The translations under genes were made by a program, and so were the position numbers. A stretch of DNA of 63,685 bases, filler included, from Octopus bimaculoides (lineage: Eukaryota), in NCBI RefSeq assembly GCF_001194135.2. It is 7 parts of 7 records of this genome, joined end to end, with 100 filler letters (N's around TTAATTAATTAA, not from the genome) between each part and the next. Parts side by side here need not be neighbours in the genome. Positions count along the whole stretch, not along the records: positions 32,485 to 37,331 come from NW_026426926.1; 6 more parts are not named here. One strand, given 5' to 3'. This document shows positions 32,385 to 37,331 of this stretch, in pieces. Within the stretch, counting starts at the first letter, position 1. Each line of letters begins with the position of its first letter. The notes under the pieces are model-generated. The model searched no databases. It saw only the letters and a list, made by a program, of their open reading frames with translations, and was not told the origin of the DNA.

Positions 32385-33563
32385 NNNNNNNNNNNNNNNN
32401 NNNNNNNNNNNNNNNNNNNNNNNNNNNNTTAATTAATTAANNNNNNNNNNNNNNNNNNNNNNNNNNNNNNNNNNNNNNNNNNNNTCACAACGCCCGGTCT
32501 GAGAATCGAAACCGCGATCCTATGACCGCAAGTCTGATGCCCTAACAACTGGGTCATTTCGCCTCCACATGAAGAAGATGGATAGATAGATAGACTGACA
32601 GGCAGGCTGACAAAATAGACAGAGAGACACAGAATGATCAACCCTTAAATAGGCAGATTGATTAACAAAATGGCTAAGCAAAGAATAAAAATATATAACC
32701 AATCAGGTTAATCTATTAACCTTTTGCCCCAAATATGTGGCTCTAAGCTTGAATTAAAAACTACAACCATCATCACCACCACCACCACCGCTGCCGCTAG
32801 CATCATCATCATTATTGCTGTTGTTGTTGCTGCAGTTTTGCTATTTTGTCTGACAGAGTTTCACGTCAACATAAGAAGAGCACATAATTTTGGCTTCTCT
32901 AGCACAAGTGGATAAGACAAACATATTCACCTTGCAGTAGTACATCAGTTGCTTACAGCAGAAAACATGTAATTGAAATCAGTCACACAAGCAAGCAGTT
33001 CCATTATTAATTCTACGTGTGTATTTGTATGACTGTGAGAGAGAGAGTGTGTGTGTGTGCTTGTTAGCAGATATATTACAAACCTACACATGTGGACTTA
33101 TATAATTTGAACACACACTTCACATTCTCTTAAAGTTTCTAAATTCTTATGACGTATACAATGTATGTATGTATGCATGTATATAACATGTACATATTGG
33201 AAATATTATTGTAGATATCATGCAAACAGATAGATATTAAAATTATTATATGATATTAAAACATACCGAGAGGAAAAGTATTTATATAGATAAAAAAAAA
33301 TAAATAAAGATTAATTTAATTAAGTCTTTAAGGTAATAATTTCTTGTTACAAGCTTATTAAGAATATAATGTAATAAGTATAAATTAATTAATTACTGTA
33401 CATACATGAGTGTGCATGTGTATGATATGTGTAAATCCACCTATCTATCTATCTGTCTGTCTGTCATTTTATCTAAACAAATGTATCATATGTTCTCCAT
33501 GCCAGCATGGAGAATGGACGTTGAGTGATGAAGTGATGATGACAATCATATATACATATGTAT

Positions 33564-33606
<43 letters not shown>

Positions 33607-34394
33607 TTGTATAATTCATGCATTCTATATATATATATAAAAATCTTTTTTTTTTTTTCCATAATGAGATAAAAAAAACCAAGGCTGTGAAGATTTTAGA
33701 ACATTTGTAAATAGACGGCCTTACAGTTGTTTCCAGGATATTTATTATATCCCTTCTCCATGTGGTAACTGGAGATCTCTCACTAAGGATTTTCAGTGAA
33801 AGGGAATCATGTAATATGGGAATTCTGGCACTCCTGACAAACATGATGCTTCTGCTACAATCTTTGTGGTTGCTTTTATGCGCCTAATGCTTAGATGATA
33901 GAATCTCTCAAGGCTAATAATGGAGAATTCAGTGTTCTAACAATACATTCATGTTAAGTTGGACATAGCTTGGTCTAACCCATGCTAGCATGGAAAGCAG
34001 ATGTTAAACGATGATGATGATATATATATTTTATGATACAATTAGATGACAATTTTTTTTCCAAATGCAGAAACACCGTTAGAACAGCAGAAATATTGGG
34101 TAAATCACCTTTACAAATTTTTCCTCTTTGTAAGGGTAGTTTACCAAAGATTTCTGCTTTTCTAATGGCGTTTCTGCATTTGGAAAAAAAAATCATTATC
34201 TAATTGTATCGTACTATACACGTTTTGATGCTTACAAAAACACAAATGCTAGTTTGTTTTTATGTATATATATACATGTATGTATATATATATATATATA
34301 TACACACACACATATACATATTCATACATACATATATATATTCATACATACATATATCTACACACACATTCATACATACATGCATATACACACA

Positions 34395-34690
34395 CATGTG
34401 AAGGTGCATCACTTAGTGGCCAGGATGATGCACTCACTACTGCAAATTCATGGTATTGATTCCCCAACAAACCATTGCATTGTGTTCTTGAGTAAAACAT
34501 TACATTTCACATTGCTCTACAATCATTTCATCATCTGACATGTGTCATGTACCTCTCAATTTGATGGAGGGAGTGGGCTTATGTGAACACAAACATTTGA
34601 TCACTATAAACAGATCATGCGTGTGGTTGTTCAACAAGAAATTGCAGAACCCTCAAATGTCATCTAATGATGAGAGAGTTCATTTTATAT
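34395..34690 (+). mobile_element. CORE-like SINE (family E); partial rc copy at 37135-37290
   Basis: Degenerate tRNA head, ttgtgttcttgagtaaaacatt CORE-like segment, and body aaacatttgatcactataaaca shared in rc with 37200-37225. Confidence 0.6.
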
Positions 34691-34707
34691 GTGTGTATGT
34701 ATATATA

Positions 34708-35008
34708 TCATCATCATCATCGTCGTCGTTTAACGTTCGCTTTCCATGCTAGCATGGGTTGGACGATTTGACTGAGGACTGGTGGACCAGGTGGCTACAC
34801 CAGGCTCCAATCTGATTTGGCAGAGTTTCTACAGCTGGATGCCCTTCCTAACGCCAACCACTCCGAGAGTGTAGTGGGTGCTTTTACATGCCACCGGCAC
34901 GAAGGCCAGTCAGGTGGTACTGGCAACGGCCACGCTCGAAATGGTGTATTTTACGTGTCACCTGTACAGGAACCAGTCCATCGGCACTGGCAATGATCTC
35001 GCTCGAAT
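34708..35008 (-). mobile_element. Family D retroposon copy
   Basis: High identity to 30499-30800. Confidence 0.9.
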
Positions 35009-35084
35009 ATATATAATCACATACATACAGACACATAAAAAAAACCCATCCTGTTATAAATACATATGTAAACATCAACAGAAA

Positions 35085-35467
35085 GAATACTGGTAGAACA
35101 TTCCCATCAAATCAACTGTAAACATAATAAGCTGTATATTGTTGTTTGGGACTCACAAGAAAAAGGATGTTCTGTCATACAGGTCAGCTGTCTTGCTGAT
35201 ATGAATGTCTCTTTGAAAATCAAAAAGAAAGAGGATAACTATGGACAGAGGTTTCAAAACCTCCAGCTTCTGTATACAGATTACAAATTTACATTTATAC
35301 TAATGATAATTGGTGAACTTGGTCTTGTGATTAAATGCCTGAGTGACAATCTGGAAAAGCTAGAACTTTCAGAAAAAGAAATCAACCAGCTAACATGTAC
35401 TTAATAAATACTATCAGTAAATGGAACGGTAAATGTATGTAAAACTTTTCTAAGTTCAAAATATGAT
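35085..35467 (+). mobile_element. Decayed RLE-type LINE C-terminus (second family; related relic at 40620-40800)
   Basis: IVVWDSQEKGCSVI.VSC..D.NVSLKIKKKEDNYG...IIGELG..IKCLSDNLEKL...SVNGTVNVCKTFLSSK. The 40620-40800 relic shares aaatgcc.agtgacaa.ctgga.aagctag. Confidence 0.65.
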
Positions 35468-35847
35468 ATTAGTTTTTTTATCTACATTCCAATGATGAAG
35501 CCTTGTATCTTTGTTAGAAACCAATTCCTTCATTGCAGGAAGACTTCAAATAATTAAATATAGAAGAGAACATATGTTGAACTGAATACTAATAAAAATA
35601 GTTTTAAGCACTATAAAAAAAAAACAACAGTAGGGTGTGATTTTGAATTCTACTTTTTGGTAATTATTTCAATTACTTAATTGTGCTTGTGTCAGTATTG
35701 ATTCTAAGCTCAGCCCAGTGAATTCACTTTATATACAAGAGAAGCCAGCCACATTCAGCAATCACAGATGTCCAATGGGAAGATTTTTAGTTACAATTCC
35801 AATAGTGACAACCATATATATATATGTATGTATATATACACACACCC

Positions 35848-36028
35848 ATGCTGGTGGCACGTAAAAAGCGTCCATTACATTTCTGGAGTCGTTGAAATTA
35901 GGAAGGGCATCCAGCCGTAGAAACCATGCCAAATTAGGGTGCAATTCACCAGCTTACCAGTTTCAGTCAAACTGTCTAACCCATGGCAGCATGAAAAGCA
36001 GATGCTAAATGATGATGATGATGATGAA
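35848..36028 (+). mobile_element. Family D retroposon copy (degenerate)
   Basis: ggcacgtaaaaagc...aggaagggcatccagccgtagaaac...ctaacccatggcagcatgaaaagcagatgctaaa(tga)n. Confidence 0.8.
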
Positions 36029-36227
36029 ACATGTTGAGTGACAGACTAGTTGGTTTGTTGTACTGGTCAAAACCATGAGTTTAAGAGTAATCAAAAAAAA
36101 ACCTGTTTAAGTTTACATAAAATACTGCAGTGAAATGCAACCATTTTAATAAGAATGCTTTCTGACATTTCAAAGACAAAGTCAAGATATATAAAGAAAA
36201 AAAATAATTTTAAATGATTTCACTTAC

Positions 36228-36775
36228 CTAGGATAGGTGTTGCATTAGAATCAGGTGTGTTCTCAGCGACAAGTAATTCGAGTACATAAAGCGTAAGAAA
36301 AACAGTAAGTCCTATGGCAATTTTTTCTCCACAATGACAAGGAAGCAGGAATGAAGCTAAAGTCATCACACACAACATCAGAGTTGGTGCGATGACAATA
36401 TAATCATAGTACAAAGACTTCCGGTCGATCTCAATTGTGAAATGAATCATGGGGTGCCATCCGTCACCAGGACAACAATCACTGTCGGCTGCAACGCGAG
36501 AAAGACTGACGTTCAGCAGAACAAATTCACTGTTCTCAACGTATTTTGATAGATCCGGCTTACTGGGTTCGTTAAAGAGGTTTAGTTGCTCTCCATCGTA
36601 AACCCATGACCCGAAGCGCACTGTACATTGTTGACTATCGTACGGAAAATAGGTAACATCTACAGAGCATGAAGATTTTATCATTAGTGGCACCATCCAA
36701 CGTACTCTTCCTGACGGCTTGATCATTATCTTACTTCCAGTCACGTTCACATAACCAGCATTGTTTTCTGACGCC
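36228..36775 (-). CDS. Large internal exon of a Cys-loop cation channel subunit, nAChR alpha9/10-like with atypical ligand site
   Basis: Acceptor tgtgttttgcag| (phase 2), donor CTAG|GTAAGT (phase 1), 548 nt open. It encodes the Cys loop CSVDVTYFPYDSQQC, loop B GSWVYDG, vicinal CC, M1, the GEK motif, M2 IAIGLTVFLTLYVLELLVAE and the M2-M3 loop ending PILG. Confidence 0.95.
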
Positions 36776-37298
36776 CTGCAAAACACAGATGAAATAATAT
36801 GGTGATACTATAAGCATTCGAAAATATACATTACAATATTATAAATATTACAAAGTCATAAGCGAGATGTATTTTGGACTGTTTCAGACATTGATTTAAT
36901 TTGCACACATACACACACACACAAACACATCATGTAAAACAAAGTCGAACGCAGGTATATGAAACACCATACAACATAAATTCTTGGTTTATATAAATTA
37001 TCTCCACCTCTGGAGGATGTGTCTCAATCACTAAATGGTAATTGGAAACAGCTTCATATGAAAAGGAAAGGGAATCTAAAGAATCAAGTGTTCTCCTAAA
37101 ATGTCACTCCATTAAAGAAAGGTGCAGGCTTATTGCCCCATTGTTAGATGATGGAGGAGGGTTTCACAATTTCTTGCTGGACAACCACACTGATGCTTTG
37201 TTATAGTGATCAAATATTTGTGTTCAAATAAGCTCATTCTCTCCATCAAATTGACATTGCTTGTACAGGTGCACAAGTTCCACATGTCAAACATTGAA

Positions 37299-37331
<33 letters not shown>

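What the first reader, a model, noticed from the sequence alone, without database searches (positions are those of the whole stretch)
36400..36680. Alpha-type Cys-loop subunit with vicinal cysteines but a dismantled aromatic box
Seen: loop B W is kept (GSWVY), but loop C is AADSDCCPGDGWHPMIHF, so the Y190, Y198 and D200 positions (Torpedo numbering) are S, H and M, with a longer, acidic tip; the usual EW becomes EF. Known: these residues bind ACh and couple binding to gating. Octopus chemotactile receptors arose from nAChRs by altering this site, but are described as lacking the vicinal Cys. Inference: a non-ACh or structural subunit, possibly a distinct or intermediate lineage of sensory-type receptor.
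Basis: partly seen in the sequence, partly recalled or inferred. Interest (0 to 1): 0.8.

Follow-up and report, generated by a model that had tools for sequence, protein, structure and literature searches.

The report
Conserved mollusc nicotinic subunit, altered site
This is one exon of an already annotated octopus nicotinic-receptor-type gene that all molluscs share; its acetylcholine pocket is altered in a fixed, conserved way, so it is probably a helper subunit or an orphan receptor, and it is not an octopus taste-by-touch receptor.

Summary
A 548-nt spliced exon (window 36228-36775, minus strand) encodes loop E, the Cys-loop, loops B, F and C, M1 and M2 of a nicotinic-family subunit. Vicinal Cys and loop-B Trp are kept. 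The Y190, Y198 and D200 positions are S, H and M, and loop C is two residues longer.

It is not a one-off. The piece is an Octopus bimaculoides scaffold carrying RefSeq partial model XP_014782680.1 ("alpha-10"). The exon is 100% identical to O. sinensis XP_029643592.1 (509 aa). Orthologues occur in cephalopods, gastropods and bivalves (NJ bootstrap 99/100). All share CC-P-G-x-G-x-H-x-M/I; His is invariant in 31 of 31.

Between distant cephalopods synonymous sites are saturated (pS 0.81), while pN is 0.039 and loop C is unchanged. The pore is a standard cation pore.

The gene has introns, is under purifying selection and resembles alpha4/alpha7 more than anything else solved, so the chemotactile-receptor link is not supported. 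It is also not the dopamine-gated channel DopC1.

Best reading (inferred): a pore-competent subunit without a classical ACh principal site, acting like vertebrate alpha5/beta3. An orphan ligand remains possible. Such incomplete alpha-type subunits are already reported as common in molluscs.

The parts
36228..36775 (-). Internal coding exon (548 nt) of the nAChR-family gene; codes residues ~142-325 of the 509-aa O. sinensis orthologue
   Evidence: ORF and translation. Acceptor ttttgcag|G and donor G|gtaagt. The alignment to a cephalopod transcript contig (L002) stops at 36226/36775. tblastn with P0194 finds only this exon in the piece.
36776..36805 (-). 3' end of the upstream intron: polypyrimidine tract and AG acceptor (AG at 36776-36777)
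   Evidence: Sequence tatcaccatattatttcatctgtgttttgcag|G. The same boundary is present in L001.
36208..36227 (-). 5' end of the downstream intron: GT donor (gtaagt); the Gly325 codon is split (phase 1)
   Evidence: Gene-caller ORFs from many molluscs end with a read-through ...PILGK just here, so the donor position is conserved.
36688..36732 (-). Loop E (complementary face), KIMIKPSGRVRWMVP
   Evidence: Alignment to alpha7. The positions vary within the clade.
36625..36669 (-). Cys-loop CSVDVTYFPYDSQQC
   Evidence: In the clade 10 of 15 positions are >=90% conserved.
36592..36615 (-). Loop B FGSWVYDG; TrpB kept; the preceding R195 is the K145 equivalent
   Evidence: W199 and Y201 are invariant in 31 of 31; the K145 equivalent varies K/H/R/N.
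36514..36558 (-). Loop F with NSEF in place of the usual NGEW
   Evidence: F 16, Y 14 in the clade.
36439..36492 (-). Loop C AADSDCCPGDGWHPMIHF: S240 (Y190 position; codon 36481-36483), C242-C243 (36472-36477), 2-aa insertion D246-G247, W248, H249 (Y198 position; 36454-36456), M251 (D200 position; 36448-36450)
   Evidence: alignment; site table (H 31/31, C 30/31 and 29/31, P 28, G 30, G 29, M 25 + I 5 + F 1, no aromatic residue at the Y190 position); coordinates.
36340..36414 (-). M1 helix (LYYDYIVIAPTLMLCVMTLASFLLP)
   Evidence: Mean clade conservation 0.91.
36259..36330 (-). M2 pore helix GEKIAIGLTVFLTLYVLELLVAEN: -1' Glu, 6' Thr, 9' Leu, 13' Val, 20' Glu (cation-type)
   Evidence: 9'L, 13'V and 6'T invariant in 31 of 31. 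Mean conservation 0.92.

Best explanation
Shown: the region is one spliced exon of the Octopus bimaculoides orthologue of a single nicotinic-receptor-family gene that is shared across Mollusca (RefSeq 'neuronal acetylcholine receptor subunit alpha-10-like'; full length 509 aa in O. sinensis). The protein has the standard subunit fold and a standard cation-selective pore: GEK at the inner mouth, 9' Leu, 13' Val and an acidic 20' ring. It is transcribed and spliced in cephalopods and is under strong purifying selection. Its principal (+) face differs from every other alpha-type relative retrieved. Both loop-C tyrosines are gone, the K145-D200-Y190 coupling triad is gone, and loop A is Phe. Loop C is two residues longer and carries a fixed motif, CC-P-G-x-G-x-H-x-M/I, with an invariant His. 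TrpB and the complementary-face TrpD are invariant. Inferred: the subunit cannot by itself supply a classical high-affinity ACh principal site. It most likely assembles with canonical octopus alpha/non-alpha subunits as a pore-forming partner that does not bind agonist on its + face. In that role it would take the 'fifth' position and/or offer its complementary (TrpD) face, and tune conductance, Ca2+ permeability, assembly or desensitisation, as vertebrate alpha5 and beta3 do. The conserved His-bearing loop C would then act as a structural cap or a modulatory site rather than an ACh clamp.
For: Identity: the exon is 100% identical to O. sinensis XP_029643592.1. The cluster member XP_014782680.1 of O. 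bimaculoides sits on a contig of 4847 bp, which is the length of the piece.
Clade: gastropod, bivalve and cephalopod orthologues. NJ bootstrap is 99/100. In the representatives search, E-values drop sharply after the clade.
Motif: H249 31/31, W199 31/31, W102 31/31, F140 29/31, no aromatic residue at the Y190 position. Loop C has 6 of 10 positions >=90% conserved against 33% for the whole extracellular domain. Nearly all of the >100 other alpha-type relatives retrieved carry Y/F-x-CC...P-Y/F-x-D.
Selection: pS 0.81 (saturated), pN 0.039, loop C identical, introns not alignable.
Expression and splicing: intron-free transcript contigs L002/L003.
Fold and pore: AF2 model pLDDT 80. The best PDB matches are alpha4, alpha7 and alpha1.
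Precedent: beta3 has loop A Phe, TyrC1 replaced by Asp (alpha5 also lacks this Tyr) and the post-loop-C Asp replaced by Phe, and both are regarded as accessory (PMC9319688). In oyster only 13 of 33 alpha-type subunits keep the complete principal site, and in human 8 of 10 (PMC6896357).
Against: There are no functional, co-expression or tissue data for this gene. The near-invariance of six loop C positions, including the His, is more than a purely passive subunit obviously needs, and it fits a real binding function. Loop E on the complementary face varies within the clade, which is not what a dedicated complementary-face partner would predict. The resemblance to alpha5/beta3 is at single positions and is probably convergent: beta3, alpha2 and alpha9 extracellular domains score alike (169-175 bits). 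Cephalopods carry a Trp next to the His that could partly rebuild an aromatic cage.
Confidence: 0.45

Rival explanations
1. Orphan-ligand receptor: the conserved CC-P-G-x-G-x-H-x-M loop C, with TrpB, PheA and TrpD, forms a working orthosteric site for something other than ACh. Candidates are protons, a metal ion, an amine, choline or betaine, or a hydrophobic compound. The subunit would gate a cation channel as a homomer or heteromer.
For: Loop C is among the best-conserved extracellular segments and the His is invariant. Purifying selection is strong. The nAChR family has changed ligand repeatedly: DopC channels gated by dopamine (10.1101/2025.04.02.646353), CRs and the orphan Alpo4 (PMC10338036). 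Divergent mollusc clades with altered binding residues have been proposed as candidates for new ligands (PMC13174522).
Against: No ligand is known. The position aligned with Y190 and most tip residues vary between species, so only part of the pocket is fixed. In a screen of 41 O. vulgaris Cys-loop genes against 18 ligands, the receptors named in the paper's list are DopC and AChRB channels; whether this gene was tested is unknown.
Confidence: 0.3
2. Still a cholinergic agonist-binding alpha subunit: His249 (plus Trp248 in cephalopods) replaces TyrC2 and the receptor responds to ACh or choline with altered potency.
For: TrpB, the main cation-pi partner, PheA and TrpD are kept, and Gly at W-2 is alpha-like. 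The vicinal Cys are kept. The closest solved relatives are ACh-gated alpha4 and alpha7.
Against: TyrC1 is replaced by small or acidic residues, and the K145/D200 partners are lost throughout the clade. Loss of this Tyr is the feature used to set alpha5 and beta3 apart as non-binding.
Confidence: 0.12
3. A member of, or the intron-containing sister or parent lineage of, the cephalopod chemotactile receptors.
For: An altered ACh site in an octopus nAChR-like gene. A preprint reports a 'CR-like' clade spread over gastropods, bivalves and chitons, whose membership I could not inspect.
Against: The gene has introns, whereas CRs are described as intronless. It has mollusc-wide orthologues. Selection is purifying, not diversifying. 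No chain named as a CR is among the 60 best PDB sequence hits or the 50 best Foldseek hits. No CR sequence could be obtained for a direct tree.
Confidence: 0.06
4. A dopamine-gated cation channel of the DopC family (alpha9/10-like), for example the non-functional homomer DopC2.
For: RefSeq calls it alpha-10-like, and DopC1's nearest vertebrate relatives are alpha9/alpha10. Asp at W+3 in loop B and Ser before the CC in most clade members recall dop-LGIC features.
Against: None of the 48 DopC1 HCR probe arms matches the exon or the cephalopod orthologue mRNA with fewer than 7 mismatches in 25. Peptides deduced from the probes differ (RFSCC, FASW, ISMGITT, LYNNAD). Dop-LGICs keep YSCC and both tyrosines and have Ala or Ser at W-2; this clade has neither feature. 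Likely DopC representatives (P0113, P0142) fall far from the clade in the tree.
Confidence: 0.05

Closest known systems
Vertebrate accessory nAChR subunits alpha5 and beta3
   Same: beta3 shows the same three changed positions: loop A Tyr to Phe, loss of the first loop C Tyr (also lost in alpha5), and the post-loop-C Asp replaced by a hydrophobic residue (PMC9319688). Vicinal Cys are kept, as in alpha5. TrpB is kept, Gly is at W-2, and the pore is a cation pore.
   Different: Not orthologous on present evidence: beta3, alpha2 and alpha9 extracellular domains score alike. alpha5 and beta3 keep TyrC2, whereas this clade has an invariant His and a 2-residue insertion with a conserved Gly. No functional data exist for this gene.
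Vertebrate alpha7 / alpha4 (closest solved structures)
   Same: Best PDB sequence hits (alpha4 5e-70, alpha7 6e-65 full length; alpha7 6e-34 for the exon) and best Foldseek hits, with TM-scores normalised to the target of 0.86-0.89 for the top five. Cys-loop, loop B, M1 and M2 are canonical.
   Different: alpha7 and alpha4 have a complete aromatic box and the K145-D200-Y190 triad; this protein has S, H and M at the loop C positions.
Cephalopod chemotactile receptors (CRT1, CRB1 and relatives)
   Same: nAChR-derived, cation channels, ACh-binding residues altered, found in octopus.
   Different: CRs are described as intronless retrogenes, predominantly cephalopod, and diversifying in the pocket. 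This gene is spliced, mollusc-wide and under purifying selection with a fixed loop C.
DopC dopamine-gated cation channels (O. vulgaris DopC1, Aplysia, Apis, Daphnia)
   Same: Invertebrate nAChR-family channels auto-annotated as alpha9/10-like that do not respond to ACh. Loop B Asp at W+3 and loop F NSE are shared.
   Different: DopC keeps Y/F-S-CC and the second Tyr, has Ala or Ser at W-2 and an ordinary M2 (ISMGITT). Direct comparison with DopC1 probe sequences shows a different gene.
Alpo4 (Alvinella pompejana orphan nAChR-like receptor, PDB 8BX5)
   Same: A lophotrochozoan nAChR-like orphan. It is a PDB hit at 1.3e-50.
   Different: Alpo4 keeps the aromatic residues but lacks the vicinal Cys, which is the opposite pattern. 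It is an isolated, fast-evolving lineage, whereas this clade is slow-evolving and widespread.

Membership tests
Cys-loop / nicotinic receptor family (Pfam Neur_chan_LBD + Neur_chan_memb) | Ligand-binding domain with a 13-residue-spaced Cys-loop, followed by M1-M4 | tested here: met
   Pfam hits at 1.4e-26 and 1.8e-07. CSVDVTYFPYDSQQC is present. The full-length orthologue models as the standard fold (pLDDT 80; best Foldseek hits are nAChR subunits).
Alpha-type nAChR subunit | Vicinal Cys-Cys at the tip of loop C | tested here: met
   C242-C243 at window 36472-36477; 30/31 and 29/31 in the clade.
ACh-binding (agonist-competent) alpha subunit | Complete principal face: TyrA, TrpB, TyrC1, TyrC2 | tested here: not met
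   F140 (A), W199 (B), S240 (C1), H249 (C2). The D200 equivalent is Met and the K145 equivalent is Arg.
Cation-selective pLGIC pore | GEK at -2' to 0', 9' Leu, acidic 20' ring, no Pro-Ala insertion | tested here: met
   GEKIAIGLTVFLTLYVLELLVAEN.
Chemotactile receptors (CRs) | Intronless gene structure (retroposed) | tested here: not met
   The exon is flanked by an AG acceptor and a GT donor, confirmed against a transcript contig. Introns exceed 10 kb in L001. The CR feature is taken from PMC13174522.
Chemotactile receptors (CRs) | Predominantly cephalopod expansion with diversifying selection in the pocket | tested here: not met
   Orthologues across Mollusca. pN 0.039 against a saturated pS, with loop C identical among cephalopods.
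Chemotactile receptors (CRs) | Phylogenetic placement within or next to the CR clade | not testable with these tools
   No CR sequence could be retrieved. No chain named as a CR is in the 60 best PDB sequence hits or the 50 best Foldseek hits. The primary CR papers are not held.
DopC dopamine-gated cation channels | Y/F-S-CC motif with both loop C aromatic residues; Ala or Ser at W-2 of loop B | tested here: not met
   This gene has D-S-D-CC, His at C2 and Gly at W-2. The features are from 10.1101/2025.10.31.685654.
DopC dopamine-gated cation channels | Identity with O. vulgaris DopC1 (LOC115218923) | tested here: not met
   None of 48 HCR probe arms matches with fewer than 7 mismatches in 25; the deduced peptides differ.
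DopC dopamine-gated cation channels | Identity with DopC2 (LOC115215511) | not testable with these tools
   No sequence and no mapping from gene ID to protein were available.
Vertebrate alpha9/alpha10 orthologue (the RefSeq name) | Preferential similarity to alpha9/alpha10 over other subunits | tested here: not met
   The alpha9 extracellular domain scores 4.5e-49, no better than alpha2 (1.7e-50) or beta3 (1.2e-48). alpha4 and alpha7 are the top hits. Clade members are variously auto-named alpha-10-, alpha-9-, alpha-5-, beta-3- or alpha-2(-like).
Accessory-type nAChR subunit (functional class of alpha5/beta3) | Joins heteromers without providing a principal agonist site | not testable with these tools
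   Only the sequence signature could be compared. Electrophysiology is required.

The most novel reading that the evidence does not exclude
The mollusc-wide 'His-loop-C' clade (CC-P-G-x-G-x-H-x-M/I), of which this exon is the octopus representative, is a ligand-gated cation channel for a non-cholinergic signal such as protons, a metal ion or an amine. The invariant His would be the key sensor. That would add a further transmitter or modality switch within the nicotinic family, fixed since early molluscan evolution.
Probability: 0.25. Interest if true: 0.7.

Novelty: new member of a known kind. Interest (0 to 1): 0.3.

Why it matters
Molluscs carry tens to hundreds of nicotinic-type genes, and most have no known ligand or role. 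Most of the lineages discussed in the literature are fast-evolving, lineage-specific expansions. This one is a slow-evolving orthologue found in cephalopods, gastropods and bivalves, with a sharply defined, invariant change in loop C. That makes it a tractable deorphanisation target, because one construct per class and one His-to-Tyr reversal would be informative. If it is accessory, it would be an invertebrate counterpart of alpha5/beta3 that arose independently at the same positions. As it stands it is an annotated gene in a category already reported for oyster: alpha-type subunits with an incomplete principal site. The finding is therefore a modest lead, not a surprise.

Tried and rejected
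(1) CR comparison. The primary CR papers (PMC7605239, PMC10228259, PMC10262778, PMC11055638) are not held. No chain named as a CR appeared in the listed PDB or Foldseek hits, so no direct tree with CRs was possible.
(2) DopC lead. The alpha-10-like name and the alpha9/10-like DopC family suggested identity. This was rejected for DopC1 with HCR probe sequences and by motif. DopC2 remains unresolved.
(3) The alignment supplement of the DopC paper is extremely gapped and was cut when stored, so it contains no octopus entries.
(4) The look-up of encoding contigs for the O. sinensis protein returned nothing, so I obtained no full gene structure or neighbourhood.
(5) Accession and SRA-run searches in the paper library found nothing, so there is no tissue information.
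(6) The Lymnaea LnAChR paper is not held, so the clade could not be mapped to an LnAChR letter.
(7) The MolluscaGenes supplements are not held, so I cannot say which of its 15 clades (for example Alpha-A10a or CR-like) this one is.
(9) Pseudogene or artefact was rejected: the ORF is intact, splice sites are conserved, transcripts exist and pN/pS is low.
(10) ARAGORN and Rfam found nothing in the piece.

Full report
**What is in the sequence.** The piece (window 32485-37331) holds one convincing coding feature, an ORF on the minus strand at 36220-36786. It matches Pfam Neur_chan_LBD (1.4e-26) and Neur_chan_memb (1.8e-07). The true exon runs from 36775 to 36228. It is preceded by ttttgcag and followed by gtaagt. 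An intron-free cephalopod transcript contig (L002, Logan SRR27666065) aligns to the window only from 36775 to 36226, which confirms both junctions. tblastn with the full-length orthologue finds no other exon in the piece. The exon encodes loop E, the Cys-loop, loop B, loop F, loop C, M1, M2 and the start of the M2-M3 linker (coordinates).

**The observation.** HMMER alignment to human alpha7 (6e-34) shows loop B GSWVY with Trp kept. Loop C is AADSDCCPGDGWHPMIHF, with Ser, His and Met under alpha7 Y188, Y195 and D197 (Torpedo Y190, Y198, D200). Loop C has a two-residue insertion, and SEF replaces GEW. In addition, the K145 position is Arg, so the whole K145-D200-Y190 triad is altered. M2 is a normal cation pore: GEK, 6' Thr, 9' Leu, 13' Val, 20' Glu.

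**Identity.**
- The exon is 100% identical to O. sinensis XP_029643592.1, 'neuronal acetylcholine receptor subunit alpha-10-like isoform X1', 509 aa.
- The same 90% cluster holds O. vulgaris CAI9731213.1, Argonauta hians GAB1606116.1 and O. bimaculoides XP_014782680.1.
- XP_014782680.1 is a 215-aa partial model whose longest contig is 4847 bp, exactly the length of the piece.
- The window is therefore a small O. bimaculoides scaffold and the gene is already annotated.
- In the full-length protein loop A is PDIFIFN (Tyr93 to Phe) and loop D keeps its Trp.

**A conserved clade, not a one-off.**
- Searches returned orthologues at 52-67% exon identity from Lottia, Haliotis, Patella, Littorina, Aplysia (NP_001267736.1, from a deposited mRNA), Lymnaea, Biomphalaria, Argopecten, Pecten, Crassostrea, Pinctada, Solemya, Mytilus and others.
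- In the exhaustive representatives search the clade stands apart: E 1e-62 to 1e-78, then a drop to about 1e-45 and below.
- An NJ tree recovers the mollusc clade in 99 of 100 bootstraps and cephalopods in 100 of 100. Its nearest neighbours are a nemertean (Tubulanus, YECCPGPYPQM, both tyrosines present) and annelid-type sequences without the Cys pair. That sister relation is weakly supported, at 10 of 100.
- Among 31 clade members the His at the Y198 position is invariant. The two Cys, Pro, Gly and the inserted Gly are each present in 28-30 of 31 members. The D200 position is M/I/F, and the Y190 position is never aromatic (S 19, E 7). TrpB, Tyr151 and TrpD are invariant, and loop A is Phe in 29.
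- Six of ten loop C tip positions are >=90% conserved, against 33% for the extracellular domain as a whole. M1 and M2 average 0.91-0.92.
- Nearly all of the more than 100 other alpha-type relatives retrieved carry the canonical Y/F-x-CC-x-x-P-Y/F-x-D.

**Selection.** Against the orthologous exon of a distant cephalopod (L001, ENA contig), nucleotide identity is 78% and amino-acid identity is 95%. Nei-Gojobori pS is 0.81 (saturated) and pN is 0.039. Only the exon aligns, not the flanking introns, and loop C is identical. Argonauta differs at six residues in the exon, none of them in loop C. This is a functional gene under strong constraint, and the constraint includes the unusual loop C.

**Comparison with chemotactile receptors.** CRs are described as intronless, predominantly cephalopod, and under diversifying selection in the binding pocket (PMC13174522; PMC11526382). 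This gene is spliced, has orthologues across Mollusca and is under purifying selection. For the full-length protein the best solved relatives are alpha4 (5e-70), alpha7 (6e-65) and muscle alpha1 (3e-61). The 60th listed hit is 5-HT3A at 7e-43, and no chain named as a CR is listed. The 50 best Foldseek matches of the AF2 model (pLDDT 80.4) are all nAChR chains: alpha4beta2, alpha7, alpha3beta4, another neuronal entry and muscle/Torpedo types. I could not obtain a CR sequence, so placement relative to CRs in a tree remains untested. A preprint's 'CR-like' clade of non-cephalopod molluscs cannot be excluded as the home of this gene.

**Comparison with DopC.**
- A recent preprint describes dopamine-gated cation channels whose nearest vertebrate relatives are alpha9/alpha10. 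It covers O. vulgaris DopC1, orthologues in Aplysia, Apis and Daphnia, and DopC2, which gave no homomeric current.
- Because this gene is auto-named alpha-10-like, I tested the link. None of the 48 DopC1 HCR probe arms matches the exon or the cephalopod orthologue mRNA with fewer than 7 mismatches in 25.
- The peptides the probes encode (LYNNAD, FASW..YDAYQ, VVRFSCC, FYMPSDSG, ISMGITT) differ from this protein.
- Dop-LGICs keep YSCC and both tyrosines and have Ala or Ser two residues before TrpB. This clade has neither feature.
- Likely DopC representatives fall elsewhere in the tree. The gene is not DopC1. DopC2 cannot be checked without its sequence.

**How it probably works.**
- Shown: standard fold, cation-type pore, transcription, constraint, and a principal face lacking both loop C tyrosines and the gating triad.
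- Inferred: it does not provide a classical ACh principal site.
- The same three positions are changed in vertebrate beta3: loop A Phe, first loop C Tyr replaced (also lost in alpha5), post-loop-C Asp replaced by Phe. Both subunits are generally regarded as accessory (PMC9319688).
- In oyster only 13 of 33 alpha-type subunits keep the complete principal site, and in human 8 of 10 (PMC6896357). The category is therefore known and common.
- I favour an accessory or complementary-face role in heteromeric neuronal receptors (0.45).
- The fixed His-bearing loop C is the main argument for the rival, a genuine non-cholinergic binding site (0.30).
- A low-potency cholinergic site, possibly helped in cephalopods by Trp248 next to the His, is less likely (0.12).
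- CR-lineage (0.06) and DopC (0.05) readings are minor.

**Verdict.** The gene is annotated and conserved, and it belongs to a documented category. The specific conserved His-type loop C signature is, as far as I could find, undescribed, and it is a reasonable deorphanisation lead. Interest is modest.

Noticed in passing
window 36778-36807 and 34109-34183 (minus strand): The RefSeq partial model XP_014782680.1 (P0220) starts with intron read-through (YHHIISSVFCR). It ends with 22 residues (ETPLEKQKSLVNYPYKEEKFVK) that map to 34109-34183, inside a hairpin repeat, and are absent from all full-length orthologues. Both ends of the model look artefactual.
   Followed up: yes
window 34053-34191: Near-perfect hairpin: 65-nt arms, 88% complementary, 9-nt loop, with further inverted flanks at 34027-34065 and 34180-34218. 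It looks like a MITE-type element in the intron.
   Followed up: partly
window 33973-34021, 34711-34775, 35963-36027; 34812-34885 / 35864-35937; 34556-34609 / 37201-37254: Several copies, direct and inverted, of dispersed repeats (core ...CCATGCTAGCATGG...GATGATGATGAT). They are 80-91% alike, SINE-like, and fill much of the intron sequence.
   Followed up: partly
window 32485-32565: The reverse complement reads like a tRNA-derived SINE head (…GGTTTCGATTCTCAGACCGGGCG…) and is cut by the edge of the piece. ARAGORN calls no tRNA and Rfam finds nothing.
   Followed up: partly
window 33555-33640, 34255-34400, 35810-35850, 37297-37331: Long TA / CA / TACA microsatellite tracts. The scaffold ends in (TA)n, which probably explains why the assembly broke here.
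   Followed up: no
O. sinensis P0194 vs P0218, residue 313 (window codon 36262-36264 = GAG): The two O. sinensis RefSeq 'isoforms' differ only by E313K at the M2 20' extracellular ring. The O. bimaculoides genome encodes Glu. The cause (allele, editing-related annotation or alternative exon) is unknown.
   Followed up: partly
related proteins P0009, P0010, P0012, P0013, P0016, P0190, P0199, P0201, P0208, P0210, P0211: A bivalve-only paralogue group of this clade (bootstrap 99/100) has GWK instead of GEK at the inner pore mouth (-1' Trp). This is an unusual selectivity-filter residue for a nicotinic-type channel. Some members have also lost one or both vicinal Cys but keep the His.
   Followed up: partly
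related proteins P0057 and P0075: An unrelated nAChR-like lineage (WLPDTFIYN, NSEW) has His at the first loop C Tyr position: RRHSCCPEKHPF in P0057, which also has His at the second Tyr position, and RMHSCCDDTYPD in P0075. This is a separate case of Tyr-to-His replacement in loop C.
   Followed up: no
L001 (ENA ERZ21867824 ctg122480l) 9950-10501; L002/L003: The orthologous exon in L001 has no other exon of the gene within 10 kb on either side, so the introns are very long. L001 is 88% identical at nucleotide level to the transcript contigs L002/L003 but only 78% to the octopus exon, which suggests a decapodiform or otherwise distant cephalopod source.
   Followed up: partly
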